A stretch of DNA of 64,000 bases from Glycera tridactyla (lineage: Eukaryota), in contig OZ286475.1 of NCBI GenBank assembly GCA_965644265.1, positions 14,756,001-14,820,000 of the forward strand, in the 5' to 3' direction. This document shows positions 10,561 through 35,964 of the stretch, one piece after another. The notes under the pieces were generated by a model, which was given only the letters and a program-made list of their open reading frames with translations, was not told the origin of the DNA and ran no database searches. Numbering within the stretch: position 1 is the stretch's first letter; each line of letters starts with the position of its first letter. Both the position numbers and the translations under genes were made by a program.

Positions 10561-12261
10561 TGACCCTTAATCAATTTTTCCGTGGGAGGCTGTACAGGCG
10601 TGCCCGTTTGAGTGTGCGCTGTGCATTGCAATCAACCTGCCCATGAACCCTCCACTGAGCTGGTAGATAAATGGTTTAGAAACAATTTTTTTGCAGGGTA
10701 GTCGGTTAGACACTGGCCATGCAATCTCCAGGTCAGCGGTTCAAATCTTCCTATTGCCGATCACCCCCGCGCTCCGGACTCAAGTGCGGGGAGCACGGGA
10801 GCGAGAGGCGAATGACGTACTCCCCGTACTCTGGCGATTCCAGCTGCCTAATATGTTAAAAAGTGAATCTGCTTGTGAAAAAGTGTCTTTATTGAAAACC
10901 AGAATGCCAGCCACTTTATACTGTAGATGTATGCTGAGATATTGATGGTCCAGCGTGGCCTACTTGGTTGGACGCTGGCCATGTGATTGATGGGTCCTGA
11001 GATCGAATCCGCTGCCAGATACAAAACTTTTCACTCAGAAACATCTTGATTTTATCTTTAAATTCATTTTGTAATGGAGATATATCCATTTGGGATATCT
11101 TATTTAATGTTCTGAATGAAAAAAACAACATATCATGTATTTTTTGTCATGAAAATCATTCAGTCGCTCCGGGGAATAGAACCCATACTCTCATGGTAAA
11201 ACACCTTCCCGTGCTCAGCGAGCGGTACATTCACATCAGAGACTAACACCGCCCCGTAATCAATTGCAATTATGACGGGCACGGCATGTGACAGTGATAA
11301 TGTGAGTCATCCCGTTATTTGAATAACCTTATACTGCTCCATATGACTAAAATGGCAACAGTTTCTGGGTGAAAAGCTGTGCTGACTCACTTTTCAACAC
11401 TTCAAGTTGCAAAATTATAAATCTTAGATAAATCAAGATGTTTCTGAATGAAAAGTTATTTTCACTTTAGCTGATTTGAACCAGCGACCTGTGCATTACT
11501 TTGCCAGCGCCTAACCAACTAGGCCACGCTGGAACACCCTAGTCCAACTTATGATAGGCCACCAAGATTGTTACACTTGAATAGACTGCCAACTACCAAC
11601 TGGCAGCAATGGGGATAGAAACGCTCGGTGGGGGTTAATCGTCCATAACGCGGGCGGTGAATCGTCCAGAAAAACCGGCGGTGAACTGTCACGGGTGGTG
11701 AATCGTCCTGAGACCATGCCTCTCCAAACCCTAGCGGAGATGGCGGGAACCAGCCAGGCGACCACCTAGCGGGATTCTTTCCCGCGTCACGCGCCAATAG
11801 CCTCACTTATCCAATCGGCAGCTGTGCGTGTGACCGATCGTAGCGCCATCCGAGTCTGCAGCACTGGAGATTAGCCGCGCAGCCGACCGCAGGCGGTTTC
11901 ATTTCGGTAATCAGGGCAACTTTCTCTTTCAAGTTTTGTCAATTCCAGAAGTAGCTGGTCAGTATAATTTTCGTGTGTTCGATCGGGCAGAGTGGGCGTT
12001 TTTTTTTTATTATCGTTGACAATTATTCGCAGGCATATTGTGAAGGTGAATTTGCGATGTTTTCCGTCGGTCTCTTCACTGGGGCGGTCTCGGTGCCAAT
12101 GTTTTCCTTCGGTCTCGTCACTGAGCAGTCTCAGTGCCGCAGCTGAAGTGCGCCTCCGTTGTCTCTGGCATGACTGGGAATGGGACACAAGTTTCAAGTG
12201 ATCTGCTAGGGCCAACGATCTTACGAGGTGTGTTGCAGAATGTCGCCCGAAGTACTTATTA

Positions 12262-13705
12262 CATCTGGGCAGGGATCGAACCCATGTCATCCAGGTTATT
12301 TTCCAAAAGTGACAGTCTTACCCATTGAGCTACCAGTCCATAACACATTCCTTATCCATGAATCTACAGCTGCCTTACCACACAAAATATATATTACATT
12401 AGGTCAAGGTAACAAAATGGCCTCAACCACACAAGAGATTAGAACCAGCATCCCTTGGTATTTTGCTGGGCCGAACAACAGTGATGATGGCCTTAAAAAA
12501 GTGTGTCAGTGGTCAATTGGACATGTGAGTGCCTGATTCTACCTACATTTCAACTGGTTGTTTACTTCCTGGAAAAAATAAATTTGACCTGAGCAGGGTT
12601 CGAACCCATGACTTCCAGGTCATTCTCCAAAAGTGACAGTCTTACCCATTGAGCTACCAGTCCAAAACACATTCCTTATCCATGAATCTACAGCTGCCTT
12701 ATCACACAAAATATATATTACATTAGGTCAAGGTAACAAAATGGCCTCAACCACACAAGAGATTAGAACCAGCATCCCTTGGTATTTTGCTGGGCCGAAC
12801 AACAGTGATGATGGCCTTAAAAAAGTGTGTCAGTGGTCAATTGGACATGTGAGTGCCTGATTCTACCTACATTTCAACTGGTTGTTTACTTTCTGGAAAA
12901 AAATACATTTAACCTGAGCAGGGTTCGAACCCATGACTTGCAGGTCATTCTCCAAAAGTGACTGTCTTACCCATTGAGCTACCAGTCCAAAGGGTACTAA
13001 GCAACTGCAAATCTGAACCTGCTTGACCACACATGATACATTATCCATCAGTTAAGGTAACAAAATTGCCTCAACCACACAAGAGATTGAAAACAGCATT
13101 CTTCGGTATTTTGCTGGGTCAACAACAGTGATGATTGCCTTAAAAAAGTGTGTCAATGGTCAATTGGGCATGTGAGTGCCTGATTCTACCTACATTTCAA
13201 CTGGTTGTTGAATTTTTTGGAAAAAAAATGCATCAGACCTGAGCAGGGTTCGAACCCATGACTTCCAGGTCATTCTCCAAAAGTGACAGTCTTACCCATT
13301 GAGCTACCAGTCCAAAACACATTCCTTATCCATGAATCTACAGCTGCCTTACCACACAAAATATATATTACATTAGGTCAAGGTAACAAAATGGCCTCAA
13401 CCACACAAGAGATTAGAACCAGCATCCCTTGGTATTTTGCTGGGCCGAACAACAGTGATGATGGCCTTAAAAAAGTGTGTCAGTGGTCAATTGGACATGT
13501 AAGTGCCTGGTTCTACCTACATTTCAACTGGTTGTTTACTTCCTGGAAAAAATACATTTGACCTGAGCAGGGTTTGAACCCATGACTTCCAGGTCATTCT
13601 CCAAAAGTGACAGTCTTACCCATTGAGCTACCAGTCCAAAGCACATTTCTTGCCCATGAATCTACAGCTGCCTTAACACACAAAATACATATTCCATTAG
13701 GTCAA
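12262..13705 (-). repeat. ~325-bp tandem array (5 units), each with a 78-nt tRNA-like Pol III unit
   Basis: tRNA-like segments at 12262-12339, 12586-12663, 12911-12988, 13236-13313 and 13560-13637 (periods 324, 325, 325, 324). A box TAGCTCAATGG, B box GGTTCGAACCC or variant, and a T6-T8 run 7 nt downstream in units 2-5. Confidence 0.85.
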
Positions 13706-14280
13706 GTCTTCTCAGACCTTTCCCCGAATTTTACTATGCATTATCTTTCAGGAAAAGTACTCTTCGTCGCTATGGGTTTCCAGAAAACCAATAGCAACTG
13801 AGTACACTACCTATTCTGATATTAAGTGGTCCCATACTTTTATGAAATGGAACCATGGACATAAATATAAGTACATGTAGTATTGAAAAATAGTGATAGC
13901 TGGGAGCCAGTTGATTAATAAATTCATTGAGTTTGTAGCCATAGTAACTTATGTCACGAGATTAAAGCACTGGATGAAGATGAGATGTCATCTTTGACTG
14001 AGCCATCAAGCATACCTAGTAAGATTGAAAAGTGAAAATCTTGCACTGCGATTTCTCAGTCCCAAGTTTCACCAAAGATCTGCCTATGATAATTCAAAGC
14101 AAGCAGATGAACTGCAGAGGATGCCTCCCAATTGTATGGAATTACAGAGATGCCAACCATTACGATTTTGGCCTAATGATTACGATTTTCACCCCAATAT
14201 TACGCCATTACGATCTTGTAGTCAATTATTACGCTTTTTGGAGGTGACTGGTACTGCACGCTGCTACAGTCCATTCCATA

Positions 14281-14455
14281 CAGTGAAATCTGCGATGAGA
14301 GACCACCTCAATTATCAATTAAAAGTGGTCTCTCAAAAAAGGTGGTCTTTGGTCTAAGGTATATTTGACTATGTCAAACAAGAGCTGCCCTAAAAACGTG
14401 GTCTACCGCAGGAGGCAGTCTCTCAACAGCAGGTCTTTCATTGCAGGTTTCACTG
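14281..14455. mobile_element. Tc1/pogo-type MITE (TA TSD) nested in the giant element
   Basis: TA|CAGTGAAATCTGC...GCAGGTTTCACTG|TA. Confidence 0.8.
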
Positions 14456-15177
14456 TATCTGAAATCAGGTTGATGAGGACTGAGAGTTCAATGGTTGCCA
14501 GTCATGATGTTGGATCAACGGACGAACTGCACAATGCATCCATGCCATTAAATCTCAAATCGGGCGACATAGACACTGATAGACATGATATTTGATATTC
14601 TGAACCCAAATGATGAGAGAGGTTAGCATGGCTTAGCTGGCAAAGTGTTGGCCGTGCAATCCATAGATCCCCGGTTCAAAGCTGCAAATGCCGCAAAAAA
14701 TAATTCATTTGGAATCAATTTAATTTTTTATGTAATTTATCATTCTACCACCTAAAATGTTGCAAAAAGTGAATCAGAATGTGAAACAATGTCATTAGTA
14801 AAAGAAGAGGAACTTTGAATATTTTGACAGTAATTTCGACAGTATCACACACTTCACTTATTAATGATGACTAAATCGTCATTTGATGAGGATAAAATGA
14901 AACAACTTTTTACCTGTGACCATTCTGAACAGTTTCAACGTGAAAAGTTATGAGTTCATTAGCAGATTCGAACCGGCGACCTGTGGTTTACCTGACCAGC
15001 ATCTAACCAACATGGCCATGTAGGTTACATATTCCATGTTCATGAACATGGTCTGAATAATATTGTCACCCTACACCGGACCATGTGCGTGCATGTAAAG
15101 GTGCGATCACCTAACACCCGGACGGTCGTTCGCTCATCACGACGAGCAGCGCCCTCTGAGTGCGATATGTATTCCAA

Positions 15178-15960
15178 AAGTGACAGGCTAACAATGTGTC
15201 AATGGTCAATTGGACATGTGAGTGTCTGATTCTACCTACATTTCAACTGGTTGTTGAATTTCTGAAAAAAAAATACATCAGACCTTAGCAGGGTTTGAAC
15301 CCATGACTTCCAGGTCATTCTCCAAAAATAACAGGCTAACCCATTGAACTACCAGTCCAAATCATATTCCGTGTCTCCAAATCTGAACTTGCTTCACCAA
15401 ACATGATACATGATCCATTAGTCAAGGTAACAAAATGGTCTCAACAATGGTCTCAACCACACAAGAGTTTGGAACCAACACCCCCCGCATATCGCTGGGT
15501 CAACAACAGTGATGATGGCCTTGAAAATGTGTGTCAATGGTGAATTGGACATGTGAGTGTCTGATTCTACCTACATTTCAATCGGTTGTTGAATTTCTGG
15601 AGAAAAATAATACATCAGACCTGAGCAGGGTTCGAACCCATGACTTTCAGGTCAGTCTCCAAAAGGGACAGGCTAACCCATTGAGCTACCATTCCAAAGC
15701 ATATACTGGGTCTCCAAATCTGAACCTGCTTCACCAAACAAGATACATGATCCATTAGTCAAGGTAACAAAATGGTCTCAACCAAACAAGAGATTGGAAC
15801 CAGCATCCCCCGGCATATTGCTGGGTCAACAACAGTGCTGATGGCCTTCAAAATGTGTGTAAATGGTCAATTGGACACTTGAGTGACAGGCTAACCCATT
15901 GAGCTAGCAGTCCAAAGCCTATTCTATGTCTCCAAATCTGAACTTGCTGGGTCAACAACA
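15178..15960 (-). repeat. More diverged continuation of the ~325-bp tRNA-like array
   Basis: Full 78-nt units at 15281-15358 (T9 run) and 15618-15695 (T5 run), and a truncated unit at ~15885-15912. Confidence 0.8.
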
Positions 15961-16073
15961 GTGTTGATGGCCTTAATTATGTGTTTCAATGGTCAAATGT
16001 GAGTGTCTGATTCTACCTACATTCCAATGCTCAATCCGCTAGGCCTCACATGCTAATTGTCTTTTATTTCTAG

Positions 16074-16540
16074 GACTGTTCATCTGACCATTGACACGAC
16101 TCAGTGGCCAGTCTGGCCTAGTTCGTTGGATGCTGGACGCTGAACTCTCAGGCTCCCAGTTCCACTCTGCCGAAAGCAGTGAGTGAATTTTTGTCGTTTT
16201 TTGGGTAGATAAACTGTTCGGAATTGCATTTTTTAACAAGATATCAAAGCATTATTGATAACTCACTCATACAAATACATATATTGATTAATAACAAGGA
16301 TGTGATACTTGCATTAATTATGAATTAACTTTGTTTTGCACCAGCATTACTTGATCACTAGCAATCTTAGTGTTAGATGGCTAGTGCGTAACCCACTGGG
16401 CAATGCATGCTAATAGATTTTTATTTCTAGGACTGTTTATCTGACCATTAACGGACAACGAGTCAGTGGCCAGTGTGGCCTCCTAGGTTGGATGCTGGAC
16501 GCTCACCCCTCAGATTCACAGTGCCACTCTTCCGAAAGCA
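16074..16540 (+). other. Two tandemly duplicated putative non-coding exons (16074-16178 and 16431-16540)
   Basis: Both have acceptor ttttatttctag|GACTGT and donor GAAAGCA|GTGAGT. Lengths are 105 and 110 nt, and copy 1 has stops in all three frames. Confidence 0.5.
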
Positions 16541-16796
16541 GTGAGTAAATATTCGTCATTTCTTTGTCATCAGCTTGCACGGATTTCATGTGTATTCAAC
16601 AAAAACAGTTTGAGTTCAAGTTGTCTGCCCAAACTTCCTCCCAAATGTCTGTAATTCATCATTATACTGTCTAACATAATGCAAAAATGTGTGTCACTAG
16701 AAAGAAAATGCCTAAATTGAAGAAATGGTGTTTGTAAGAGAATTGCCATTTCAACTATAAAATTATGATTTGATGGGGATAACGTGAGATGTTGTG

Positions 16797-17012
16797 CAGG
16801 GATTGTTTTACACTGTGCCCTGTGCTAAATGGAACATAAAGTTATGGAAGGGCACATTAAATTGCATATATTGTGCCAAGAAGGCACATATGATCATTCA
16901 TACTTTGATATAATTACAAGATCTGAGGCGCACACGAATCCGAAATGACACATGGAATTTGCATCAATGTGCCTGAAAGACCCATACATATTCCCAAGTA
17001 AGAAAATCCCTG
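16797..17012 (+). mobile_element. Third copy of the CAGGGA MITE family
   Basis: CAGGGAT...ATCCCTG termini and similarity to 23-238 and 1244-1455. TSD not recognisable. Confidence 0.65.
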
Positions 17013-17824
17013 GCTTGTTGAAGTAGTCGTGTCACAGCCAGGACTGCTTTCCACAAACGGAACAAGGAATACATGCAGTATACGATGAATCTGATGACTT
17101 GTATACAAGAATCCAAGTTGATTTGATAAAATAGTTTAAACAATGAAAGATCAGCCGACTTCTCCTCTCACACAACGCGACATGTATGGAGAAAGCCTGT
17201 TGAGGCTAAACATAGTGTATGAAATATAATTCTGACCAAGTTAATGCAAAAATAGATTCGTCAAACTCGCCCTGTCTGAGCAGCTGAGCAATGTTAAATC
17301 CAGGAAACTTCCACTGCAAATGGAAGTTCGGCACAAGGGAGCCTCCATGTTTGCTTGTCAGCCCTTTTTTGAGACAGAGCCAAGCCAAGTCGATCATTGC
17401 ATTTGAGGGAGATGTAGAAGAGACGATCTACGTGAATGCTTTCATGGGGCAAACGGATGAACAGAGGCTATCGGGATATTCGCACTGAGTTTGAAATTGC
17501 ATTTTTACTCCACTGTCATATGATCTTGCTTTTATCACATGGATTAGTGGATAAGTTATCACATGCAGTACTAAACATCTGATACTGTGCTGAAAATGTC
17601 ACCTCAACAGATACCACAGAATGCACTTACATGGATAACAGTGAGTCCATAAGTGTCCATAAAAATGTAACTGTGCACCAAATAATATAATCAACTGGTT
17701 ATGATTAACAAAAGTGCAACCTACCACATTTCTCTGGAAATGAACACTGGTAATATGTTATTACTGGATTTTTTTTAAGGTGGAAGCTATCCAATAAGTA
17801 AAGATGAGTCAGATGTGAATCAGG

Positions 17825-19861
17825 ATGGCAGGAATTGATGAGATAGGAAAAATATACTGCAGAAGAACTTTGAAGAGGCATGCAAACAAACGAGTTGAGT
17901 GCCTCCTGTCCAGAGGTGAGGACGATAACGTTGCAGGTACCTCTGAGACTTCACCAAAAGTTCTTGAACTGCCTGAAGAAGATCACACAGAGATTGTAAA
18001 TCACATGTCAGAATTGCATTGTGAGGATGAGTATGGCGCTCAAGTGCAAGCTGAACTTATTTCTCTAGATCTTGACGCCACTTCAAATTCTTAGTCGGAC
18101 TGTGATGTGCTCAGTGATTCGGATTGTGATGACAAGGCAGAAGATACGATATATAAGGACCTGAAAGAGTGGGCTGCTGACAATGACATTCGGCATTCCC
18201 ATCTGAATTCCCTCCTAAGAATTCTGAAACCGTTCTTTCCCTCTTTGCCACTAGATGCACGTACATTACTGGGAACACCAACAACCTACCAGGTCCAACA
18301 GATTGGTGGTGGAGCGTACCATCACTTTGGTGTAGCTAATAACGTTATTCATAGGGTGGAGGCATTACGAAAAATACATGAGACTGATACTCTGACATTA
18401 CAGGTCAATGTGGATGGCTTACCACTGTTCAAAAGTACCAATGAACAATTTTGGCCAATACTTGGTTGTCTACTTGAAGACCCCTCCAAACAACCATTTA
18501 TCATTGGCCTATTTCTTGGCACAAAGAAACAGATTGATGCGAATGAATACCTTCGTCAGTTTGTCGATGAGATGATGCTGTTAGAAGAACAGGGGATTGA
18601 TATAAATGAAAAACATTACATTCTCAAAATTGGCAATTTTGTTTGTGATGCACCAGCCCGTGCTTTCATTAAGCGAATCAAAGGTCACACTGGATATCAT
18701 GGATGTGAGAAATGCACGCAAAGTGGTGAGTGGGTTAACAACCGAATGACATTCCCAGATATGAATGCTCCCAAAAGAACCAATATCGCCTTCGATGACA
18801 TGGACATTGAAGAGCATCACCATGGCCCTTCCTCTCTCTCACAGCTAGGAGTTGGCTTAGTAACTGGTTTCCCTCTAGATTATATGCACTTAGTTTGCTT
18901 GGGTGTTATGAGAAAGTTGCTAAATCTCTAGCTCAAAGGACCTCTATGTGTTTGTTTAGGTAGCCGACTTGTTGGATTGATTTCAGATCAGCTGAATCTT
19001 TTCAAAAGTTACCTTCCACATGATTTTTCACGGAGAGGGAGGTCTCTATTGGAGTTGGACCGATGGAAAGCAACCGAGCTGAGAACATTCCTACTTTACT
19101 CAGGACCAGTGGCTTTGAAAGGAAATGTTTCTGATGCTGTTTATGGCAATTTCCTGATGCTCCATGTTGCAATAAGTATACTAGTGCAGGGCGAGTTTTG
19201 TGAACTCTACCTCGACTACGCTCGGCAACTTCTGACTCTATTTGTCCAAAATTTTGCAGATATCTATGGTCATGATATGCTCGTTTATAATGTGCACACT
19301 TTAATTCACTTACCTGATGATGTCTTGCGTTTTGGACCATTACAAAATTTCTCCTGCTTCCACTTCGAAACATATTTGCACATGATAAAGAAGTTGATAA
19401 GGAAACCAAGGTACCCTATGCAACAAGTCATCAGGCGAGTTGATGAAAAGAAGTTTCTTGAAGCCAAATTGAGAGAGAAAGAAACAATGCTGAAAAAAAA
19501 ACATCATGCAGGTCCTTTGCCGAATAACTTCCCACACTGCATCCAGTATAGTGAGGTGAACCTAGAGAGTTACATGTTGTCAATCTCACAACCAGACAAT
19601 GCAGTACTAAGTAATGGAGAGGTATACCTCATACGCAATATTGTCATGCTTGGTGACTTAGTTCAACTTGTGTGCAGCCAGTTTCAATTCAAGGAATCTT
19701 TCTATCAATACCCATTGGATTCTTCAAATCTGAGAACTTACTTTGTCAGACACCTAGATCGCCACCTATGTACTATCAACATTGGCGATGTCACTGGCAA
19801 GATGGTTCTTCTTCCTCTGAGAGATGGATTAGTTTCAATTCCATTAAATCACACATTGTGA
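17825..19861 (+). pseudogene. CMC/EnSpm-type transposase, single 679-codon frame broken by two in-frame TAG stops
   Basis: ORFs 17825-18094, 18107-18931 and 18977-19861 share one frame, with stops at 18092-94 and 18929-31 (LLNL*LKGP, probably TGG>TAG). Motifs VNVDGLPLFKS, QFWPILG, CDAPARAFIK, GHTGYHGCEKC, PLDYMHLVCLG, RWKATELRTFLLY, YNVHTLIHL. Confidence 0.9.
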
Positions 19862-20229
19862 AAAATTTGATTGCCAAGAGTCACTCTGGACAAGGTGTGG
19901 TGTGCAGAAATCCGCTGCAGTGCATATTGTCAGGTTTTCCGTATGATTGATTTTTGAAAGAGTTACTTTTGTGTAAGACCTCTCTGTAATTACTGATACT
20001 TATCCAAGCTTTGCTCTCAAAACTGTATTTGGCCAAAGAAATGCATAAGAAGCAGTTCCCCCACAAATTCTATGATATGTGCTTTTCCCTCCATTTCTCA
20101 TTGAAACGAGTGTCATGGCAGGCTCTAACCAGGGACTAGCAACCTGTATGCGTAGTGATGTAGTCTCTGCCCCCTGAGGTAGGCACTGCCCCTGTCCTAC
20201 AACTGCACATTGCTGATCCCAAGATTGAC

Positions 20230-20492
20230 TCTGCCAGAGCCATTAGTCTGAACCCACAAAGCTGATATATCTGTAATCAAATTCCCAGTGCGTGGCGACT
20301 GGGATATCAAAGGCTGGCCATGTTCATAGGAGTCTCTTCCTATATGCACGTAAAAGAACCACCGCTGTCTTTTGCAAAGAGTAGGTACGGCCCCTGGCAT
20401 GCGGTGACTCTTTTCTTCAGTATTTTCAGTTTTTTTTAGTCCGATATAACCCAAGCGGGTTTAAGCGGCGCTGAACTCAAACAAACAAACCC
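20230..20492 (+). mobile_element. SINE-like 3' fragment
   Basis: Contains GCACGTAAAAGAACC and ends GGCGCTGAACTC(AAAC)n, resembling invertebrate SINE bodies and tails. Family not assigned. Confidence 0.4.
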
Positions 20493-21519
20493 ACTCACCA
20501 CTTATCTGCTGCATCAAATACTTCTCTGCTAGGTATCAGAAGTACATTGGCAAAACACATGCAATACAGTATGCCACAAGTGCCTTGTGCTTGTCAACCA
20601 AGAGTAAAACAATGAAAATCATAATTTAATTCTTGCGAGCATTACCACTGTGTTTGATATGTTGCAGATACTTTGTAATTCCGTATGTCTTTGTGATGAC
20701 CCTATTGAAAATAGCGGCCAACAGCAACACCAAATGCAAGGCGACCTCTTGCGGATCTCCAACTCATTAAAACAGTCAGAGAACAAACAGAGTGTTGCGG
20801 CCAGCAGACGCAGTACCAACTCAATAAATTTTCCGGTGTTGAAACCCACAACTCCTTCAGCCTGCTATCTGATCTCCCTACTCAAGTGCAGAAAGTGGAC
20901 CTAAAACCTCGACATTTCTTTTTTTTCCCACCGAATAAGCATGGCGAGTCTAAATCACATATCGAAAATCACCAGAGATCAAACCTTTCGTGCTGCCACG
21001 ACAGTAAGTACGGCTGCATTGTCACCTGTATATTGTGAATACCTTTACTGTCAATATGTCATTTCAAGCGCAGATCTATTGGCTGTGCAATAATATACCC
21101 ACCGGATTGTCCATATATTCATAGATAGCATTTGCACTATTATGATTAAAAACTCAACCTTGTGATGTATCGCCTGACAACCTCACCATACCGTGACAGA
21201 CCTATCCCGATGATTTTTTGTTTGTAATGCGCACCTACCAGATTAGTCACAAATCAATAGTTAACATGACGACCACTGATATCCAAATTCACTCCGTCAC
21301 TAACTGTATACTCATGTTAACCAACATAGACCGTTGAGCTCACATATTCCACCGCACATAGTGCCACATCTTGCACAAGTATATGTTGCCTGTCTCTATC
21401 CTGCATACGTCCAAATACATTTGTTGCAGAATGTTGGTGTGTGCACAAAGGACGATGCTAAGGGACGCCTTGTTGATTGTCCAATTGCCAGACGCGGTGT
21501 ACAACTTGGAAAGGTTGGC

Positions 21520-22374
21520 ATGCCATATGTCATGTATATTGGTGACAGTTATGTCCGGCGCCTAGGTGATTTTGCCACCAACAAATCAACTGGCTCGAAA
21601 TACAAGTACATTTTGTCAAAGTTCTACTTCATGGGGATTGGAGGGTCCAAGTTCACAAATTTATTGCGGTCAATTCATGGTGATATGTCAGCAGACAAAC
21701 TTGCCATCTATGGAAATAGTTGGGACACATTTGTGGAATCAAAGTTCCGTCCATCGTTCGTCGTCATCACCTGTGGATCCAATGATGTCTCATCGTATAA
21801 TGAAAACATCAAGCCCCTGAAACGACGTCATCAGCACCCAGGTCATATACAAAATGTACTTCATGCAAAACGAAATAATTTCATGGAACACACAATCCCG
21901 TATATTGATGGGCTCATTATGTTTCTGCAGGAGAAATTTCCTAACATTGAGGTATTTTTCACCCCGATCTTCATTAGACCAGATTGGTACCCAGAGTCTA
22001 TCATTCTTGCCAAACGGCTGGATAAGTATGTTTTGAACACCATCAAACAAATCAGCACTTATAACATTCACTGTCTGACTATCAGACGAATCATGAAGAT
22101 TATACCCAAGCCCGCAAAACATAATCGATCGGTGTCCAAGTACTGCTCTGGTCATATTCATCCCGGTGCGCTCCACTATGACAGAGTGCACCTCAGCTAT
22201 GTGGGAAACTGTCTATTCTGTTATGACTTATGCGGCTCTCTACTTGATAAGTGGGTGGATCTCTTTGGTGAAAAGAGAAATGAGATGAGGCAAGGAAAAA
22301 ATAAGAAAAAGAGGAGAGTATACACACGTAAGACCAAAGAGCAGAAAGCAGCAGAGCACTTGTCCAGAACCTAA
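21520..22374 (+). CDS. Intronless SGNH/GDSL-family hydrolase (284 aa from ATG 21520; frame open from 21334)
   Basis: All four blocks present: YIGDSY (catalytic Ser), GIGG, CGSND, DRVH (Asp-x-x-His). Basic C-terminal tail RQGKNKKKRR. No stops or frameshifts. Confidence 0.85.
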   Translation: MPYVMYIGDSYVRRLGDFATNKSTGSKYKYILSKFYFMGIGGSKFTNLLRSIHGDMSADKLAIYGNSWDTFVESKFRPSFVVITCGSNDVSSYNENIKPLKRRHQHPGHIQNVLHAKRNNFMEHTIPYIDGLIMFLQEKFPNIEVFFTPIFIRPDWYPESIILAKRLDKYVLNTIKQISTYNIHCLTIRRIMKIIPKPAKHNRSVSKYCSGHIHPGALHYDRVHLSYVGNCLFCYDLCGSLLDKWVDLFGEKRNEMRQGKNKKKRRVYTRKTKEQKAAEHLSRT

Positions 22375-23175
22375 GTGCTTGAAATGAAGCGAATATTCAC
22401 TCCATGAATCAATATTTCTTATTTGGAAAAACGCTATCCGAAATTTGCTTTCGTTTCTGGATGTTTCTGAAATTGAATCTCCCATCTTGACAAGTGGAAC
22501 TAATGCATGCTGCATATCAATAGTAGACAGTATATCCTCAGGTATCTCTCAGGCTCTGTCTAATAAGATGTCAATGACCATATTCCTGTTGACTATATCA
22601 TGCATACAATGTTTACTGCATACTGTATACAAAGCATAGCTGGGCATAGAAGAGAATGAGCTGTGATCGGTACCTTGGGCTGTGATGGACTCATGGGGTG
22701 GTCCTGGAGTAGTTTTCCCCAGTGATGTGATCTCTACCCGATGTGGTAGTTATTGCGACTGTCCTAGGATGCTGTTTCGGGGTGTCCTCTTGGACCCATC
22801 ATTGTCTGATTGTGCTACATCATAACTTGCTCCTGATTAATGATTGTGGATGCTATATCATAACTTGCTCCTGGTTACTGATTGTGGGAGCTTGAAATAT
22901 TACATGTACAGAAGAAATGTGTATCAAGGCAAGGTTGTCTGATCTCATCGAATTTGCTTCTGAATTAATGTTTGTATAGGTTTTTCACCATGAATATTCA
23001 ATGTTCCATGTGTTAATGTATTATTATGTTCTGATGAATGTATATTTTAATCATCACAAGATTGAAAGTGACTGTAAGGATATCTGTACGAATGTATGTA
23101 TGTCTGCAGTGAGTACATGCCATTGAAACCAACCGAACGCAATGAGGTATGCCTGGAAAATGAAAATTCACTTAC

Positions 23176-24954
23176 ATGAGTGTATCAGTGCAAATTGTGC
23201 ATGACTGAAACTCCAATAATGTATTTAAAGAAGTATGCCTGGAGAGAGATATCAATTTGCAGTCTAAGGAGTTCTCAGATTGCAATGTGCTGCATTACCC
23301 AAATGATGTTCCCTATGATGTTAGATGTGAATTAACTCACGAAAGAGTTGTATCATGTTTAAATGCAAGTTTGTTGTAGTTTCTGATAATGTCTCGATGA
23401 AGGCGATCCACTTCTTTTGTGTGTGTGTGTTTCTGTGTGGGTGTGTTGTGTGTGTGTGTGTGTGTGTTTGTAATTAGTGCCCTTTGTGTGAAGGCACAGA
23501 TGGCGTTGGATACACTGTTTTTGACAGCTTTTTGCTATAATGGCAAAGCCATCATATATGCCTCTCACATATCGAATATGTATCATATTGCGGCAGAATT
23601 GCAAAATTTGATAATTGGCATTTGTACTATGTACCTTGGATGTACTTGTAGATGTTGTAACATAGATAAACGCAGAAAAAAGTTCCATATACATATTACC
23701 TCTGAATTGTCTATGTTGAACAAACTCAACTACTGTGTATTTCTTAAATTAAACATTGACTTCATAGATACTCTTTTAGCTTATCTCAACACCAACATCA
23801 GAAGCTCTTCGATACACCATTCCTAACAACTAAATCACCTGATGCACAGAGCATCTCTGAGGTGATGTAGGTGCCAAAAGGTCTTCTATGTGGTGACAGT
23901 TCAAAGAAGTAATACTAGTTGATTTTACATGAGCTTATAACATCACCTGTAAATGAAATGCACAAGGACTTTAATAGAGTAGTATCACTGTTCAGAAACT
24001 GAGCAAGAACCACCAAGTGAACATCACAAATATTCAGGTGTTGTATGATGCCATTTCTTGTTTCATCATATCTGCATTTTTATCTCATCCAATATGATGC
24101 AGTGTTTGAAGTGGCAGTGCTGCACTTTTTAAAAGGAATTTGCATAAGACTGAAATGTCGGCATCCAGACAGTTCCAACCTGCTCTGAATTATCTGTATA
24201 TTGTTGTGCATGTTGCTGACAAACATTATTTTCCCCACATTCTGTATTGAGAGTTTCTCTACAAATTATTGTCTCCTATATTATGTTCATGGCAATGATG
24301 GGACACTTACCCCCAAACACTTGCCTGCTCTTTTTTCAATCAAGCAGACTGTTCTATCTGTTCTGACCCATTGTTCATTTTGGTCAATGGCCAAGATGAG
24401 ATGGATTTCTCATGGAGACTGGCAGGAAATGTGATATTCACCCCTGCACAAATGCCAAAAGATTCACGGGAGATTTGTATCATGTTGTATTCTCAAGTTT
24501 GTTGTTGTTGTTGTATTATTCTTTGACCTATCACATGGCACAATGAATTCTGAAATGGAGCGAGCTTCTGAACATGTCTTGATGAAGCCAGTCCACTTCT
24601 TCTGTCGTTTCATCACTGCGAGGCACATTGTGGTGTAGTTTGGTCTGGCACCATTGTAAAGTTTGGCCAGGCACTGTGGTCGGCTGAGAGACTTGTTTTG
24701 TGATTTACCTTTGCCCTACTTGAAGAAAGGATGAATGTGGATGTATGAGTGAAAAGGGAAGGGTGTCGTGGTGAAGGTATGAGTGTATGTGTGTGTGTTC
24801 ATGTGCGTGAGTGGGGGGGTGGCCGCTTTTTAGATGTTATTTACAGTTCTGAGTGAATTTTCCAATAAAGCTTTGGTAGTGACCAAGTGCATTTTGTCGT
24901 TTTTCACTATTCAAATAACCTCAGGCTCCTCATAGCTTTTCTTCTGTGTGCACG
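23176..24954 (-). pseudogene. Decayed multi-exon gene of unknown product, antisense within the transposon core
   Basis: Exon-like blocks with GT-AG ends: 24845-24954 (phase 1-0), 24715-~24530 (phase 0 start, open for more than 60 codons), 23839-23946 (108 nt, phase 1-1), 23176-23312 (phase 1-0). Isolated TGA/TAG stops interrupt otherwise protein-like frames. It may extend to ~22240. Confidence 0.5.
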
Positions 24955-25050
24955 CTGAAAAGTGGCACACTGAATGTGGAAATCTTCATCACCAAATTTT
25001 GTCCCAAAATTTTCCAATTGATGTCAAATTTGTCCCATTTATGTTGGTCA

Positions 25051-25205
25051 GGACCTACCTACCTACATACCTCCCAACCTACCTACCTACCTACCTACCT
25101 ACTTACCTACCTGCCTACCTACCTACCTACCTACATTCACACCTACATACCTACCTACCTACATTCACACCTACAAACCTACCTCTATACATACCTACCT
25201 ACCTG
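25051..25205. repeat. (CTAC)n microsatellite
   Basis: Direct observation. Confidence 0.95.
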
Positions 25206-25268
25206 CTTACCATTCATTATACGGTGGCTGCCAAATTGACCTTACATTGGTGTGAACCTGTACAGGAA

Positions 25269-28200
25269 ATGCCATATGCAGTTGTGGAGTTTAAAGATGA
25301 GGATGATGCGGTGGACATGGTGCCAATGTGCTGGCTGCCCAACAACAGCCAGTGCATGTGGCCTCCCTCACATCTCCTTGGACGACTACAGCAGATGAAG
25401 ATGAGAGAGCAGCGGCCAGACGAGACCTGGACGCCCAATCGTGTAGTCATTCTCTGTCAGAGCGGTGAGCCTAATCAGATCATCTGCTGTATAATGATTT
25501 GAATCAACAGCTCATCTCCTAATCTGTATCCACATCATTTTGACAAAATTACTAGATTCATCACATCACACAAATGGGATGTCATTGCTGAATCAAGAGT
25601 CAGCGATAATTGGTTTAGTAAGAGTAATAATTTGAGCATTTGTAACAGCAGCAACAGCAGCAGTAGTGCAGTGTATACCTTCTATTTCGAACCTAGAGTT
25701 CTATTGACTTCATTTCTCAGAAGAGGTACATTTGACTGATTGTATTGGTATGTATGTTTGTTTGTTTGAGTTTAACGTCACTTGAACCCATGTGTCCCAA
25801 GTAAAGGGCATTCCACAATATAGCATCCCTACCACTATGTATGTTTTTTCTTTGAATTGCAGCAACATACGAAGGAGCTAGAAAAAAACTGCGAAAGGCG
25901 ACAGAAACTTCAGACCTCGACACCACAGATGACGATGTCCTTCGAAAAAGAAGGTAGGTAAATCCATGAGGTGTTTTTTGTTACAAACAGGATTTGTATC
26001 AGAACCTCAGTTAGGTCATTGAGATTATGTGCACTGAAATGTATTCACCAATGACTAGTGACTCATGACAAGTGCCAATTATATTCATGGAATGGAAATA
26101 AATGGCTTACATGTTATTCTTTGGTGATTTGGAAGGTCTAAGTGGCCTAGTCTCAAGTCAATCGTGAAAAAACATGTTTTTTGAGAATGTCTCCCATCAT
26201 AATTCAGTCCAAGGAAATACAGAACATGAAAGACCATCGATGCCATCACTAACATGACCACCATTGCCACGGACACTGCCAACACCACCACCGGACCCCT
26301 ACCACCACCATTGGTTGAGAAAGGGTGGAGAATGGTGAGAGATGGGTGGGAGGAAGGGATTGCACGAGGAGGGAGAGGAGGAGGGTTGGAGAAGAGACGG
26401 AGAAGGCTTGGCTGGTCACATATCTAGTTTCACCAAGAAAATAACGATAGCAACTCTGTTTTTAGATATGATATGTCTCTCTCCCCAGCTTCATTTTCTG
26501 TCACAAACTCATTTTTCATGAAGATGACATTTAGACTCCTCTAATTAACAAGGGATGGTGTAGTATTTGTGACAAAGTGTATGGCCCCTATCCCAGACTA
26601 TCACCAGTAGCATTCATGTTTATTTTTCAGACCCACGCAGTATAATACTGTTGAGGAAGAAGAGCCACGTAAGAAACAAAGAAGGGCTACTTCAAAGCCT
26701 TTGCCGCCTCCTCCGGTATTCACAACATCAATCTCAAGTAATGCACCTAGCTTCTCGCAACCTGACTCTGCAAATGCACAAGGTAATTTTCATAATTTCT
26801 GTAAACCTAAACATCACACAAACATACACCAACAGTTACCGGCATGAGGTTTCACATCAAGCTTTGAAGTGCTTAGTGAGAGTGAATGTTACTCACTACA
26901 CCATGATTGCAGGTAAAAGATGGTTTCCTCAATGATTGCGAGAAATGGGAAAGCCAGCAACAAAATTGCGAATATTGTAATGCAAAAATAAGTTACTTGT
27001 CTTTTGTAGTATTCACATTTTAAACAGTGAACTAATAATGATAAGTATAACGTTAGGTCACATATTTCAGTTTCTACTTTGTCGCGAGGTACTTTTCTGT
27101 GTCTGTTCAAAGGCAGCCATGCTTGTAACTGTGTAATTCCTGGTGCGTTGCATGGTATATTAGCCCAGATTTCATCTTTAAATTGCTTCTGTACACATCT
27201 TGATTTCTGACTGAATAAGGGGAAATGCAATGCTGGCCTGCTTGGTAGGCAACTCATCAGCATGTGCTTGGCATTATTGTGAAGAACATGCAATGTACAT
27301 GGTGGTAACATTCAAGGTTCTCACCCCAGGTTTCTTGGCAGAAAAATAATTTTTATAGCATTCTCCAATATTTCTCCCATACTGCCGGGCTGATGACATG
27401 GGATGGGAATATTTGTATCAATAATATCTTTTAATTTCTTTTTCTATATAGATTAGGTATCTCTAGTTGGTTTGGCTGTATATTCTAAATGCTGGCATAT
27501 ATTGGGATGTTAGCTGAATATCATGACAGTGGATTTCCTTTTGCACCATAAATGGTTCATCAATTCTCTTCACAGCAGCTGTTATTAGCAGCTGAATAAT
27601 GTTATCATTTTTCTTTCAATTAAGGTCCTTCACCGAGGACATATGCAAGTGCAGATTCGCCACAGGCTCCCTCAATTGATCTAAGTGGTATGTATTATCG
27701 TGTTCATAATACAAAGAATATGTCAGGACATATGTCATGCTTCCAGACCGAATGAAAGCAATCAAAAATGGAACAGAATATCAAGAATTGAAATGGTTGA
27801 CGAAGCAACGGGAGGTGAACTAATGCCAGATGTCAGATATGAGCTAGATCAATAACAAAAATAATTAGATCCATGGGATGGATAATTGATGTGAATTTCA
27901 TATGAAACACACTATGTTGTGATGTTGACTGTGATCATCAGATCTGTGGGGCATCAGTGCTGATACCTCATCCCTCAGTAATTGACATCTGCCTGAATTA
28001 TAACCACCTTATGTACATGTTACAGAAAGAGATAGGGTCATCTTGCAAGCCCTCGAGGAAATCAAAGGCCAGGTCCGTCAAAACACGCTATTGCTCCAAG
28101 CAATTACCAAGCAGCAGGAGCCACTCAGGGCAAGATCAACTCATGAGCTGTCCTTTCCCATGTCCACCATCGATGACACCACTATTGTGGAGGCTGCGCT

Positions 28201-29911
28201 TCTTGATAGGGGGATAAGAAAGGCACTGGTAAGGTATTGATTCTACTCTGGTGATCAACTTCATTGAAGTACATACTCACATGAGTACCAATGCGTATAG
28301 TAAACTGCTCCAATTGGGTTGATAAAATCTCATTCCTGAAGTTTAGCCACCAGTTTGGCAACCATGCTTGTTTGCTTTTAGCTTGCATGAACAGGAAACT
28401 CTGAGTGCCAGCCAGGTCATTCGAGGAAATAGCAATTGGAAATGGTTTATATGTGCTGAACAACTTTGACTGGCAACTCCTCACTCTATCTCTTGGTTAC
28501 AAGACAAAGTGACCGATTACAAATGATTTTTGTTTTATGACTGTCTTTCTGTCAGTAATATGTCTTGGGTGTTACATGTCTACAATCAACCATCATCCAT
28601 TATTCAGGAGAAGCGAATAGTATGCTGAAAAGGATTTACTTTCAGATGACTGAATTGGCCAGCCTAGGTGGTGTGAACTGTAGTGATTGTGTACAGAGGA
28701 TTATGATCCATGTGATGACAAACGGTTTGGCCTGCCAGTTCAATTGGAAGGGGCGTGGAACCAAGTCAGCATTCACAAAACTGACCCTTGCGAAAGTTGT
28801 TAAAGGTAAAATCTTTTCTCTCCAATGCCCATTTCACAGGTGTCTCAATGTAGCTTGGATGGCGCTCATGAGATGTCATACAGTCAAGCAACAAGCTATG
28901 AATAGAGCTAGGTGAAATCTGTGTTCTTATATCCACGGATAATTTTAGATTTGCTTCTATGACACTTGCTGGTGGCTATACTGATAAAACCATGCTGAAT
29001 GGCAAGCCAACATCAGCATGGGTATGCTTACATGCTTGTCTAATGGGGCCCCAACGAAAGGCACGCTTTACGTTGTGGGTCGTCAACCAATTAAACCCTC
29101 AAGAGTAATTGCAAGGTCCGTCCTTGGATGATGGCTTGGTTGGATGGCGGATCAGTCATTTGGTTGGCTACACACATCACAAGAAGTCAGAAGTATGGAC
29201 TGCAGACATTGTGTATGACGAAGGGAAAGAAGAAGGTCGAGCATCCTAATTTCTGTCCACAAAATTCATAATCTCACTGCACTGCCTGATGATTTAGATG
29301 CAATGTCTCATAATAGGGCGAGGATGAACACATATCTTAACTTAGAACTCATTCATTTCATAGATGCAGCAAGGAAGAATGGATACACTGACGCATTAGT
29401 GGAAGAACGCATCAAACGGTGGCTGAAATATGCCGGAGATTGTGACGGGGGCAGGATGAGGAGGGTGACACCCAGCACTGGTAAGCTATGCATCAATAAT
29501 CATGAAATAATTGTCATATACAGTTGGACCTGCTTGAGAGATAACCCCTCCATAAAGATCATCTGCCTACAACAGCCACCAGGAGCTACAATTTCAAAAG
29601 TATTTTCAGCAGTTGGCCTTTATGAACAGAGTTGACATAGATGGCTGTATCACCACTGTTTCATATACAAATATGTGCCAACAATGCCGGTGGATTCGCC
29701 AAAAAAAACAACAATGAAATGATGGTGCATCCTCTTCAAAAGCATGCAGATTAGCTGAAATCAGGTTCAATGATCACCGGAAGGTCTATATATTCCATTT
29801 GTGCCATTGAAACTGAAATTGGACAAAAAATGGTGAATGATATGCTGTTGGTTTGTTGTAGTGATCCCTCCTCCTGTTGATGAGACGTCAGATGAAGATA
29901 GCTCTAACTGA
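25269..29911 (+). CDS. Intact 8-exon transposon accessory gene, DUF4806-like, 343 aa
   Basis: Exons 25269-25464, 25863-25953, 26631-26782, 27625-27687, 28026-28228, 28646-28805, 29364-29480, 29862-29911. All introns are GT-AG with matching phases (1,2,1,1,0,1,1), giving 1032 nt with no internal stop, and AATAAA lies at 29984. N-terminus YAVVEF...VPMCW...WPP and C-terminus LASLGG...RIM...FNWKG...K..F..L...IKRWLKYAGD.DGGR match my recollection of DUF4806 proteins (needs HMM confirmation). Confidence 0.8.
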
Positions 29912-30434
29912 TACATGGATGCATCGAAGACATGATTGATACACCTGATTGATCGATTGATGAAGAGTTATGTATCATTGTGGAATAAATTTGGGATATG
30001 TAAGAAGATCTTGGTCTTGTTTGATAAACTACTTAGCCAGTTGATACATGTCTCCTCAACACAAACCACCACACCCACCACCTGTCATGCTGCTGTCGTC
30101 AACACCACCACCACCACCACCACCACCACCACCACCCAACTGCCACCACGACTGTCGCTGCCACTACCACCATCACCACCACTATCTATGCCGTCGCCAC
30201 CACACCAACCACCACATACCTAGCTAGCGAGTCCCCGAGGAAATGTTTATACGTATTAGTCAACCCTAGTGATGATTTGACAAAGTATACTCTAGCCCCT
30301 TAGTTCAAGATTTAAATATGGGGCTATTTGAACCACATGTGAAGGTGGGTTAGATTCAGGAAATTTGGCCAGGTTTCGGGAAATAATGTCTTAGTGCACG
30401 TGATTCATGGACGACTGCCAGTAGCTGTTGGTGT

Positions 30435-35705: not shown

Positions 35706-35964
35706 GGCCATCGAAATCTACGAACGCGTCTAGAGGATGAAGGGGCTGGCATTCTGATCAGTGGTCGGGAGACCCGCATGATCTGTGGTCGGGCGAGTAT
35801 GTCCACCCGATCAGCGATTGAGGGGTCCACTCGACCAGTGGTCATGTGGGCAGGTGCATGCAGGTGAGCTGGCTCCGCACCTGACTATTCATACCGTTAT
35901 ACCCTACACTGTACAAGTGGATGCTCACACGACTCGTCGTCCGCCCAAACCAGACCTAAACCTA

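What the first reader, a model, noticed from the sequence alone, without database searches (positions are those of the whole stretch)
21334..22374. Intact SGNH/GDSL esterase as cargo of a DNA transposon
Seen: an intronless ORF with a complete catalytic set (GDS, G, GxND, DxxH) and a basic NLS-like tail, intact while the neighbouring transposase has nonsense mutations. Established: SGNH domains occur in ORF1 of some CR1/L2/RTE-type LINEs and in Ngaro tyrosine-recombinase retroelements. Inference: either a third CACTA-encoded protein or a captured, possibly domesticated, esterase. No RT, recombinase or poly(A) tail flanks it here.
Basis: partly seen in the sequence, partly recalled or inferred. 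Interest (0 to 1): 0.7.

Follow-up and report, generated by a model that had tools for sequence, protein, structure and literature searches.

The report
Lone LINE-type esterase gene inside dead transposon
The open reading frame is a real esterase gene with all its catalytic residues, but its relatives belong to LINE retrotransposons, and it sits in about 5 kb of extra DNA inside an old broken DNA transposon whose relatives carry no such gene, so it is probably a nested passenger.

Summary
Window 21334-22374 (+) is a 346-codon ORF with a complete SGNH set (Ser72, Gly104, Asn150, Asp283, His286) and a lysine/arginine-rich tail. A confident model (pLDDT 91) best matches PAF-acetylhydrolase and GDSL lipases. 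The neighbouring CMC/EnSpm-like transposase (17825-19861) has two in-frame stops.

- A search of 1.84 billion proteins found only 74 distant relatives (30% identity or less).
- Where their contigs are long enough, these relatives are extra ORFs of LINEs. They lie just upstream of an APE or APE+RT ORF2, or behind an ORF1-like gene. None lies beside a DDE transposase.
- In related transposons (Haliotis rubra and three other loci) a second gene follows the transposase within 0.2-0.6 kb. Here that gene starts 5.4 kb downstream, so the esterase lies inside about 5 kb of secondary DNA.
- No SGNH match occurs in 127 kb around nine homologous transposase loci.

It is therefore not a family-encoded third protein. 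Nested LINE-derived ORF and genuine capture cannot be separated without other copies from this genome.

Intactness is not evidence of selection (expected about 1 stop, P(0) about 0.36). The first ATG is at codon 63.

This is a new member of a known kind, of low to moderate interest.

The parts
21334..22374 (+). Open reading frame of 346 codons (stop included) encoding the SGNH esterase. Codons 1-62 are open but contain no ATG.
21520..22374 (+). Minimal coding sequence from the first in-frame ATG (Met63), 284 aa. It holds the whole SGNH domain plus the basic C-terminal helix. Calculated pI is 9.8.
   Evidence: Homology to relatives begins at ORF residues about 58-62.
21547..22191 (+). Span of the catalytic residues: Ser72 (GDS), Gly104, Asn150 (GSND), Asp283 and His286 (DRVH).
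   Evidence: All nine columns invariant in 17 relatives are kept.
22270..22371 (+). Basic tail of 34 residues with 14 K/R, modelled as the end of a long helix. It resembles the arginine-rich motif of esterase-type LINE ORF1 proteins, or a nuclear localisation signal.
   Evidence: PMC3905857; similar basic tails in relatives P0012 and P0016
17825..19861 (+). CMC/EnSpm-like DDE transposase pseudogene: 678 codons in one frame with two in-frame TAG stops at 18092-18094 and 18929-18931.
25269..29479 (+). Second, multi-exon gene of the same transposon. Matching pieces are 25269-25464, 25862-25954, about 28634-28810 and about 29387-29479. They are colinear with the gene that follows the transposase in L008 (Haliotis rubra), L013, L014 and L009. 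No Pfam family matches.
20090..25204 (.). About 5 kb of extra DNA in the transposase-to-second-gene spacer (boundaries approximate and inferred). It contains a repeat on the minus strand at about 20090-20503, a SINE 3'-tail fragment at 20868-20930, the esterase ORF, (TG)n at 23418-23471, a diverged direct repeat at 23337-23420 / 24464-24605, and (ACCT)38 at 25053-25204.
20941..21003 (+). Candidate upstream exon (inference only). An ATG in good Kozak context is followed by 21 codons and a GTAAGT donor. A candidate acceptor TTGTTGCAG ends at 21429. Both are phase 0, and eight in-frame stops lie between 21004 and 21333.
   Evidence: The model was not joined or searched as a joined sequence.

Best explanation
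The ORF encodes a catalytically complete SGNH (GDSL) serine esterase. It belongs to the family that APE-type LINE retrotransposons carry as an ORF1-class accessory gene.

Here it stands alone, without an ORF2. It lies inside about 5 kb of secondary DNA that interrupts the short spacer between the two genes of an old, inactivated CMC/EnSpm-like DNA transposon copy. That secondary DNA also holds SINE-type fragments and microsatellites.

The most likely history (inferred) is a nested arrival of a LINE-derived, ORF1-only unit. This would be comparable to the ORF1-only 'half-L1' derivatives of mammals, or to a LINE that later lost its ORF2. It would have inserted into a transposon that was already dead or dying, and it is not a gene of that transposon family.

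If translated, the protein should act like the ZfL2-1 esterase. It would have a Ser72-His286-Asp283 triad with a Gly104/Asn150 oxyanion hole hydrolysing acyl esters. Its basic surface and basic tail would bind acidic phospholipids and/or RNA.

Shown here: domain, fold, family, position inside the transposon, and absence from related transposons. Inferred: mode of arrival, boundaries of the unit, and activity.
For: 1. SGNH identity: sub-threshold Pfam hits, a 171-bit hit to an HMM of relatives, a pLDDT 91 model, and PAF-AH and GDSL lipases as best structural matches.
2. Family context. The relatives' loci are:
- L001: a 784-aa esterase ORF followed by an APE+RT ORF2.
- L003/L004: an esterase ORF followed about 0.8 kb later by an APE-containing ORF2.
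- L007: the esterase is preceded by an ORF that looks by eye like a coiled-coil/RRM ORF1 (no Pfam match).
- L017: the esterase is preceded by an ORF 44% identical to L001's upstream ORF.
Each of the three well-supported clades of the family tree contains one of these LINE-context members.
3. Position. The transposase end and the second-gene pieces are colinear with L013 and L008, but the spacer is 5.4 kb here against 0.23-0.42 kb there.
4. No SGNH match in nine homologous transposase loci totalling 127 kb.
5. The spacer also took up other repeats: a SINE tail at 20868-20930, and a repeat head at 20457-20500 that recurs in the second gene's first intron. This locus has therefore accumulated insertions.
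6. The block ends in (ACCT)38, 64 bp before the second gene's ATG, on the ORF's strand. This resembles the short-tandem-repeat tails of CR1-type LINEs such as the one at 9670-9718.
7. A basic pI and a basic tail are as described for esterase-type ORF1p (PMC3905857).
Against: - No APE/RT remnant lies downstream, although the ORF itself is undecayed. This cannot be an ordinary full or 5'-truncated LINE insertion.
- No target-site duplication or defined ends were found. The best direct repeat, 12 nt at 20955/23565, is at chance level.
- The window protein is a long, unplaced branch in the family tree. Descent from a specific LINE lineage is not shown.
- The informative relatives come from only two or three source samples.
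- A plausible upstream exon with consensus splice sites would fit an intron-containing gene better than a retroelement ORF.
- The transposon's own TIRs were not found, so 'inside the element' rests on gene order alone.
Confidence: 0.6

Rival explanations
1. Genuine cargo. A sub-lineage of this CMC/EnSpm-like transposon captured a LINE-derived (or host) esterase gene between its two genes and mobilises it. This would be analogous to the texim SGNH genes associated with Helitrons in fish.
For: The ORF lies between the transposon's two genes and on the same strand. It is undecayed. An SGNH gene linked to a DNA transposon has a published precedent (PMC4021074). A candidate intron with consensus splice sites exists.
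Against: Related transposons have a short spacer and no esterase. The extra DNA is a mosaic that includes unrelated SINE fragments. There is only one copy in the window. No TIRs were found to show that the block lies within mobilised DNA. Intactness is not statistically informative.
Confidence: 0.15
2. Host or domesticated esterase gene (texim-like), possibly with two exons, that happens to lie in TE-rich DNA.
For: The catalytic domain is complete and all family-invariant residues are kept. There is a candidate ATG exon plus intron. No ORF2 is present. One relative (L002) also lacks APE/RT within 2.1 kb downstream. Texim-like genes without TE association are reported in invertebrate deuterostomes (PMC4021074).
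Against: No relative above 30% identity was found among 1.84 billion cluster representatives, and none carries a gene name. This is unlike a conserved host gene. The ORF sits inside a transposon copy. The relatives with readable context are LINE ORFs.
Confidence: 0.12
3. A third protein encoded by this CACTA/CMC transposon family as part of its normal gene set.
For: Only its position between the two transposon genes and its shared strand.
Against: It is absent from all nine homologous transposase loci examined. In L008 and L013 the second gene's first matching piece lies only 0.23-0.42 kb past the transposase end, and in L014 its second piece lies about 0.6 kb past. The esterase's relatives are LINE-associated.
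Confidence: 0.03
4. Chance ORF, or not an SGNH hydrolase.
For: Pfam scores are below the gathering thresholds. The word-index search and the PDB sequence search found nothing.
Against: There are 74 homologues, 17 of them at E<=1e-10. The profile score is 171 bits. The model is confident and gives an SGNH fold. All four motif blocks are present.
Confidence: 0.01

Closest known systems
Esterase-type ORF1 proteins of CR1/L2/RTEX LINEs (for example zebrafish ZfL2-1 ORF1p; Kapitonov and Jurka 2003; Schneider et al. 2013, PMC3905857)
   Same: Both have an SGNH fold with a Ser/Gly/Asn/Asp-His set, closest structurally to PAF-AH. Both are strongly basic proteins with an arginine/lysine-rich peptide. 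The homologues found here lie next to APE/RT ORF2s.
   Different: There is no ORF2, no N-terminal coiled coil, and no defined LINE ends here. The sequence is too distant for ZfL2-1 to appear in the PDB sequence or fold hit lists. The H after the nucleophile (GxSH) is Y here, and the family's PRxWW motif reads IRPDW.
HAL1 ('half-L1'), the ORF1-only non-autonomous LINE-1 derivatives of mammals (PMC5753468)
   Same: It is an accessory-ORF-only unit derived from a LINE, lacking ORF2.
   Different: The ORF1 type differs (esterase versus coiled coil-RRM-CTD). Repetitiveness and trans-mobilisation are not shown for this unit.
texim SGNH hydrolase genes associated with Helitrons in teleosts (Tomaszkiewicz et al. 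2014, PMC4021074)
   Same: Both are stand-alone SGNH genes related to CR1 esterases and PAF-AH. Both lack an RT and are physically linked to a DNA transposon.
   Different: The partner here is a DDE (CMC/EnSpm-like) element and not a Helitron. No Rep or helicase domain was found. Homology to Texim proteins could not be tested because no sequences were available. Recurrence of the association is not shown.
GDSL/SGNH ORF3 of bdelloid rotifer Vesta LTR retrotransposons and Athena PLEs, and Ngaro elements (PMC5408684; Ngaro from my own knowledge)
   Same: They show that SGNH ORFs move between unrelated classes of mobile element.
   Different: No LTRs, RT, GIY-YIG domain or tyrosine recombinase occur here.
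CMC (CACTA/Mirage/Chapaev) EnSpm-type DNA transposons of animals
   Same: The neighbouring transposase has more than 1000 animal homologues at 45-53% identity. Some of them weakly match Pfam Transposase_21 (tnp2), and the window piece weakly matches DUF4218.
   Different: No CACTA-type TIR or 3-bp TSD was recognisable. The copy is dead, with two stops and several insertions.

Membership tests
SGNH/GDSL hydrolase superfamily | Block I GDS(x) with the nucleophile Ser near the N-terminus of the domain | tested here: met
   IGDSY, Ser72 at nt 21547-21549. The column is invariant in 18/18 aligned family members.
SGNH/GDSL hydrolase superfamily | Block II Gly and block III GxND Asn (oxyanion hole) | tested here: met
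   GIGGS Gly104 and CGSND Asn150. Both columns are invariant.
SGNH/GDSL hydrolase superfamily | Block V DxxH (acid and base of the triad) | tested here: met
   DRVH, Asp283 and His286. His is invariant and Asp is present in 17/18.
SGNH/GDSL hydrolase superfamily | Three-layer alpha/beta/alpha SGNH fold | tested here: met
   AlphaFold2 model with pLDDT 91.1 and pTM 0.83. Foldseek PDB top hits are PAF-AH Ib (3dt6, E=1.6e-7) and GDSL lipases, with 80 hits at E<=1e-3.
SGNH/GDSL hydrolase superfamily | Score above the Pfam gathering thresholds (Lipase_GDSL_2 / Lipase_GDSL) | tested here: inconclusive
   28.9 bits against 32.9, and 21.1 against 23.6. The hits are significant by E-value but below the curated cut-off. 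Relatives behave the same way.
SGNH/GDSL hydrolase superfamily | Hydrolytic activity | not testable with these tools
   This needs expression and an esterase assay.
LINE ORF1-class esterase | Sequence homology to esterase ORFs that lie in LINEs | tested here: met
   phmmer hits P0004, P0009, P0012 and P0201 (E from 1e-15 to 1e-12). Their loci carry an APE/RT ORF2 or ORF1-like upstream genes.
LINE ORF1-class esterase | An APE/RT ORF2 downstream in the same element | tested here: not met
   tblastn with three ORF2/RT queries, and a Pfam scan of 57 stop-free segments of 19862-25268, found nothing.
LINE ORF1-class esterase | Element ends: 3' tail (poly-A or short tandem repeat) and a target-site duplication | tested here: inconclusive
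   (ACCT)38 at 25053-25204 lies on the same strand at the block's 3' edge. No TSD above chance was found.
LINE ORF1-class esterase | Placement inside a LINE clade in a phylogeny | tested here: inconclusive
   The window protein is a long branch (1.63) and is unplaced. Three starred clades each hold a LINE-context member.
Cargo gene of a CMC/EnSpm DNA transposon | Lies between the element's own genes or termini | tested here: met
   It lies between the transposase (ends 19861) and the second gene (starts 25269). The order is colinear with L008 and L013. TIRs were not found.
Cargo gene of a CMC/EnSpm DNA transposon | Recurs with the transposon in other copies or relatives | tested here: not met
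   Zero of nine homologous transposase loci (127 kb) contain an SGNH match. Copies from the same genome could not be examined.
CMC/EnSpm (CACTA) superfamily, for the neighbouring transposase | Transposase homologous to Tnp2/En-Spm type (Pfam Transposase_21, DUF4218) | tested here: inconclusive
   DUF4218 scores E=0.01 for the window piece. Transposase_21 matches 4 of 29 homologues, best E=6e-5. All hits are below the curated cut-offs.
CMC/EnSpm (CACTA) superfamily, for the neighbouring transposase | CACTA-type terminal inverted repeats with a 2-4 bp TSD | tested here: not met
   No pair beginning CACT with at least 14/16 matches and a matching TSD was found between 14000-17830 and 19860-36000. 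This is expected for an old copy but remains unshown.
texim / Helitron-associated SGNH genes | Helitron Rep/helicase coding region nearby | tested here: not met
   No such Pfam domain occurs in the 19.9-25.3 kb segments or in the window's ORFs of at least 150 aa.
texim / Helitron-associated SGNH genes | Groups with Texim proteins in a phylogeny | not tested
   Texim sequences could not be fetched with these tools.
Ngaro / DIRS-type tyrosine-recombinase retroelements | RT and tyrosine recombinase in the same element | tested here: not met

The most novel reading that the evidence does not exclude
A lineage of animal CMC/EnSpm-like cut-and-paste transposons has captured a retrotransposon-type SGNH esterase gene, now with its own ATG exon and intron, between its two genes and carries it as functional cargo. 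This would be a DDE-transposon counterpart of the texim-Helitron association. It would also be an example of an accessory enzyme passing from class I to class II elements.
Probability: 0.13. Interest if true: 0.6.

Novelty: new member of a known kind. Interest (0 to 1): 0.3.

Why it matters
SGNH esterases are one of the few enzymatic accessory modules that recur in unrelated mobile elements: CR1/L2/RTEX LINEs, PLEs, rotifer LTR elements, Ngaro, and Helitron-linked texim. Their role, thought to be in lipid or membrane handling, is still unsettled.

A stand-alone, catalytically complete copy without an ORF2 adds a data point. It shows that such ORFs can persist or travel apart from the reverse transcriptase.

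The analysis also documents a sparsely sampled, very divergent esterase family: 74 relatives among 1.84 billion proteins, none of the 20 looked up carrying a source name. It further documents a conserved, unannotated second gene in a widespread animal CMC-type transposon.

If the cargo reading were true, it would show exchange of this module between retroelements and DDE transposons. As it stands, the locus is best read as ordinary TE nesting.

Tried and rejected
- Word-index protein search with the ORF and with the family profile: nothing, or only three family members. No named relatives were obtained.
- PDB sequence search with the single protein: nothing. With the profile: only weak SGNH hits at E around 2e-3.
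- Search for another copy of the esterase or the transposase in the window: none.
- Metagenome scan for close relatives of the esterase: none.
- TIR/TSD searches, both generic inverted repeats and CACT-anchored: no convincing pair. The long inverted pair 14932-15180 / 30506-30812 consists of copies of a tRNA-derived SINE that occurs at least four times in the window, so it is not a TIR.
- The inverted pair 20457-20500 / 25746-25789 was considered as termini of an esterase-bearing element. It was rejected because the right arm lies in the intron between the first two pieces of the transposon's second gene.
- TSD search around the esterase: the 12-nt repeat at 20955/23565 is at chance expectation.
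- Reading the upstream region 20941-21333 as a decayed N-terminal extension: rejected, because it holds eight in-frame stops.
- Homology of ORF codons 1-62 to the N-terminal 'PIYRR' motif of one relative clade: not significant.
- My recollection that the second transposon gene is Pfam DUF4806 was not confirmed and is dropped.
- Treating intactness as a sign of selection: rejected on the simple Poisson expectation.
Full report
**Scope and constraints.** The window is not human. It carries intact CR1-type LINE, SINE and intronless CUB-trypsin genes, and the nearest named relatives of its transposase come from abalone, fish and arthropods. The N runs (51312-57554) were left untouched. The broken transposase was searched only as its separate stop-free pieces. 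It was translated through its stops once, in a script, solely to count them. Spliced models (the transposon's second gene, and a possible two-exon esterase) were handled exon by exon by reference.

**1. The observation.**
- ORF 21334..22374 (+) is 346 codons long.
- It contains GDS (Ser72), GIGGS (Gly104), GSND (Asn150) and DRVH (Asp283, His286), at the nucleotide positions given.
- Its last 34 residues hold 14 Lys/Arg.
- Pfam gives Lipase_GDSL_2 at E=2e-6 and Lipase_GDSL at E=3.9e-4. Both are just under the gathering scores.
- The word-index search and the PDB sequence search were blank, so the exhaustive phmmer search was justified.
- That search found 74 proteins at E<=1e-3 and 17 at E<=1e-10. 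The best had 30% identity, and homology starts at ORF residues about 58-62.
- In an 18-sequence alignment the nucleophile Ser, the oxyanion Gly and Asn, and the His are invariant, and the Asp is nearly so.
- The window protein keeps all nine columns that are invariant in 17 relatives, and 25 of the 35 columns that are at least 70% conserved. An HMM built without it scores it at 171 bits.
- An AlphaFold2 model from the 75-sequence alignment has pLDDT 91.1 and pTM 0.83. It shows a five-stranded alpha/beta core and a long C-terminal helix that ends in the basic tail.
- Foldseek against the PDB returns PAF-acetylhydrolase Ib catalytic subunits and GDSL lipases or acylhydrolases (E from 1.6e-7 downwards, 80 hits at E<=1e-3).

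**2. Two qualifications on 'intact'.**
- The first in-frame ATG is codon 63, in the sequence G-M-P-Y-V-M-Y-I-G-D-S. That Met sits inside the family's conserved G-x-P motif just before strand 1.
- The 62 codons upstream are open but have no ATG, and no demonstrable homology to relatives' N-termini.
- The 393 nt before them contain eight in-frame stops.
- There are three possibilities. Translation may start at Met63, which would be the shortest N-terminus in the family. The start may have been lost. Or an upstream exon may be used.
- One candidate exon exists: an ATG at 20941 in a good Kozak context, 21 codons, and a GTAAGT donor after 21003. The candidate acceptor is TTGTTGCAG|21430, and both junctions are phase 0. 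It is one of only three candidate first exons in 1.5 kb, and it is unproven.
- The contrast with the neighbouring transposase is not informative. The transposase has exactly two in-frame TAGs in 678 codons and no frameshift. That rate predicts about one stop in 346 codons, so P(0) is about 0.36.

**3. What the relatives are.** None of the 20 relatives whose clusters were looked up carries a source name. Their contigs were read wherever they were long enough.
- L001: a 784-aa protein with the esterase at residues 59-299 is followed 1.1 kb downstream by a 971-aa Exo_endo_phos + RVT_1 ORF2. It is preceded by a 708-aa ORF.
- L003/L004: a 269-aa esterase is followed 0.8 kb downstream by an ORF2 whose contig-truncated part carries an APE domain.
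- L007: the esterase is preceded by an ORF that looks by eye like a coiled-coil plus RRM ORF1; Pfam found nothing in it.
- L017: the esterase is preceded by an ORF 44% identical to L001's upstream ORF.
- L019: there is another upstream ORF.
- L002: there is no APE/RT within 2.1 kb downstream.
- None of these loci has a DDE transposase.

In a maximum-likelihood tree, the three well-supported clades each contain one LINE-context member. The window protein is a long, unplaced branch. This matches the published picture of SGNH esterases as ORF1-class proteins of CR1, L2 and RTEX LINEs and of PLEs. Those proteins have a conserved active site, a high pI (10.8 for ZfL2-1; 9.8 here), arginine-rich motifs and binding of acidic phospholipids (PMC3905857). 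A caveat is that the informative contigs come from only two or three source samples.

**4. What surrounds it in the window.**
- Upstream, 17825-19861 (+) is a transposase with more than 1000 animal homologues at 45-53% identity. The link to CACTA/En-Spm Tnp2 is weak but recurrent: DUF4218 at E=0.01 for the window piece, and Transposase_21 in 4 of 29 homologues (best E=6e-5).
- Downstream on the same strand, pieces at 25269-25464, 25862-25954, about 28634-28810 and about 29387-29479 match, in order, the DNA that follows the transposase in related loci. These are L008 (Haliotis rubra), L013, L014 and L009.
- This family therefore has a second, intron-containing gene with no Pfam family. Its first matching piece lies 0.23-0.42 kb after the transposase end in L008 and L013. 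In L014 its second piece lies about 0.6 kb after the transposase end, and in L009 about 1.4 kb after.
- In the window the gap from the transposase to that gene is 5.4 kb. The esterase is thus physically inside the transposon copy, but within about 5 kb of DNA that the relatives lack.
- That DNA is a mosaic:
  - a repeat on the minus strand at about 20090-20503, whose head recurs in the first intron of the second gene;
  - the 3' tail of a tRNA-derived SINE at 20868-20930;
  - the esterase ORF;
  - (TG)n;
  - a diverged direct repeat at 23337-23420 / 24464-24605;
  - (ACCT)38 ending 64 bp before the second gene's ATG.
- Subtracting about 20090-25204 leaves roughly 290 bp of spacer, which is the size seen in the relatives (inference).
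- No RT, APE, recombinase, Rep or helicase is detectable in 19862-25268 on either strand. Because the esterase ORF is undecayed, a neighbouring ORF2 of the same age would still be recognisable. ORF2 is therefore truly absent.
- No SGNH match occurs in 127 kb around nine homologous transposase loci, either by tblastn with 74 family proteins or by HMM on six-frame translations.
- The transposon's TIRs and any TSD could not be found.

**5. Interpretation.** The best-supported reading (about 0.6) is a solitary LINE-class esterase ORF that arrived secondarily in the spacer of a dead or dying CMC/EnSpm-like transposon. It may have come as an ORF1-only LINE derivative; the mammalian HAL1 elements are the known analogue (PMC5753468). 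Alternatively it may be a LINE that later lost its ORF2.

The rivals are as follows.
- True capture and mobilisation by this transposon lineage (0.15). The texim-Helitron association is the precedent (PMC4021074).
- A host or domesticated texim-like gene (0.12). This is weakened by the absence of any relative above 30% identity.
- A normal third gene of the family (0.03). This is contradicted by the relatives.
- A chance ORF (<0.01).

If expressed, the protein should work as a Ser-His-Asp esterase with a Gly/Asn oxyanion hole. Its basic surface and tail would suit binding of acidic lipids or RNA. This is inferred from the ZfL2-1 work and was not tested here.

**6. Novelty and score.** SGNH ORFs in mobile elements are well known. 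Stand-alone ones linked to a DNA transposon have one precedent, the Helitron-texim case. What is new here is modest:
- a very divergent family member;
- a solo configuration;
- a location inside a DDE transposon;
- as a by-product, a conserved but unannotated second gene in a widespread animal CMC-type transposon.

The cargo question, which carries most of the potential interest, cannot be settled without other copies from the same genome. Overall this is a new member of a known kind, with interest 0.3.

Noticed in passing
window 25269-29479 (+); L008 11866-13867; L013 12475-16279: A conserved, multi-exon second gene follows the transposase in this widespread animal CMC/EnSpm-like family. It has no Pfam family. 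Its first exon begins M-P-Y-A-V-V-E-F and has a C-x-W-P motif. It appears to be an unannotated transposon gene.
   Followed up: partly
window 7422-9718 (+): A 5'-truncated CR1-like LINE with a 743-codon RT ORF (RVT_1, E=2e-30). It ends in a short tandem-repeat tail, (ACCTGTAAGTAA)3(GATT)3. No esterase ORF lies upstream of it.
   Followed up: partly
window 40807-43272 (-) and 46971-48797 (-): Two long uninterrupted ORFs encoding multi-CUB plus trypsin-domain proteases. They lie in what looks like a tandem duplication of about 6.17 kb, since the matches recur at that offset.
   Followed up: no
window 12228-13561 and 15200-16000: Tandem units of about 650 bp each contain a tRNA-Pro-like sequence (ARAGORN hits at 12584-12664 and 13235-13313, minus strand). 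They look like an array of SINE-like or tRNA-derived repeats.
   Followed up: no
window 11430-11527, 14932-15180 (+); 30506-30812, 31606-31702 (-): At least four copies of a repeat that looks like a tRNA-derived SINE. Two of them happen to bracket the transposon region in inverted orientation and could be mistaken for long TIRs.
   Followed up: partly
window 49720-49940 (-), 58980-59120 (+), 20868-20930 (+): A second repeat family that looks like a tRNA-derived SINE. Only its 3' tail, about 60 nt, is present just upstream of the esterase unit.
   Followed up: partly
window 50411-50791 (+): Weak similarity (E=3.5e-4, 24% over 129 aa) to the C-terminal, non-esterase part of the LINE ORF1 protein P0004. 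This may be a remnant of another LINE ORF1, next to the N-masked stretch.
   Followed up: no
window 10200-10450: A dense cluster of GACGTC / TGACGTC motifs with small palindromes (for example 10291-10313 / 10367-10389). It may be subterminal repeats of an unidentified element or a CRE-like cluster.
   Followed up: no
L001 384-2510; L017 2-1168: The esterase-bearing LINEs of the relatives have three ORFs. A large upstream ORF (44% identical between two elements, no Pfam family) precedes the esterase ORF and the APE-RT ORF.
   Followed up: partly
window 25053-25204 and 34545-35149: Long (ACCT)n and (CCCA / CACCCACCTACC)n microsatellites. They generate spurious proline/threonine-rich ORFs on the plus strand.
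   Followed up: no
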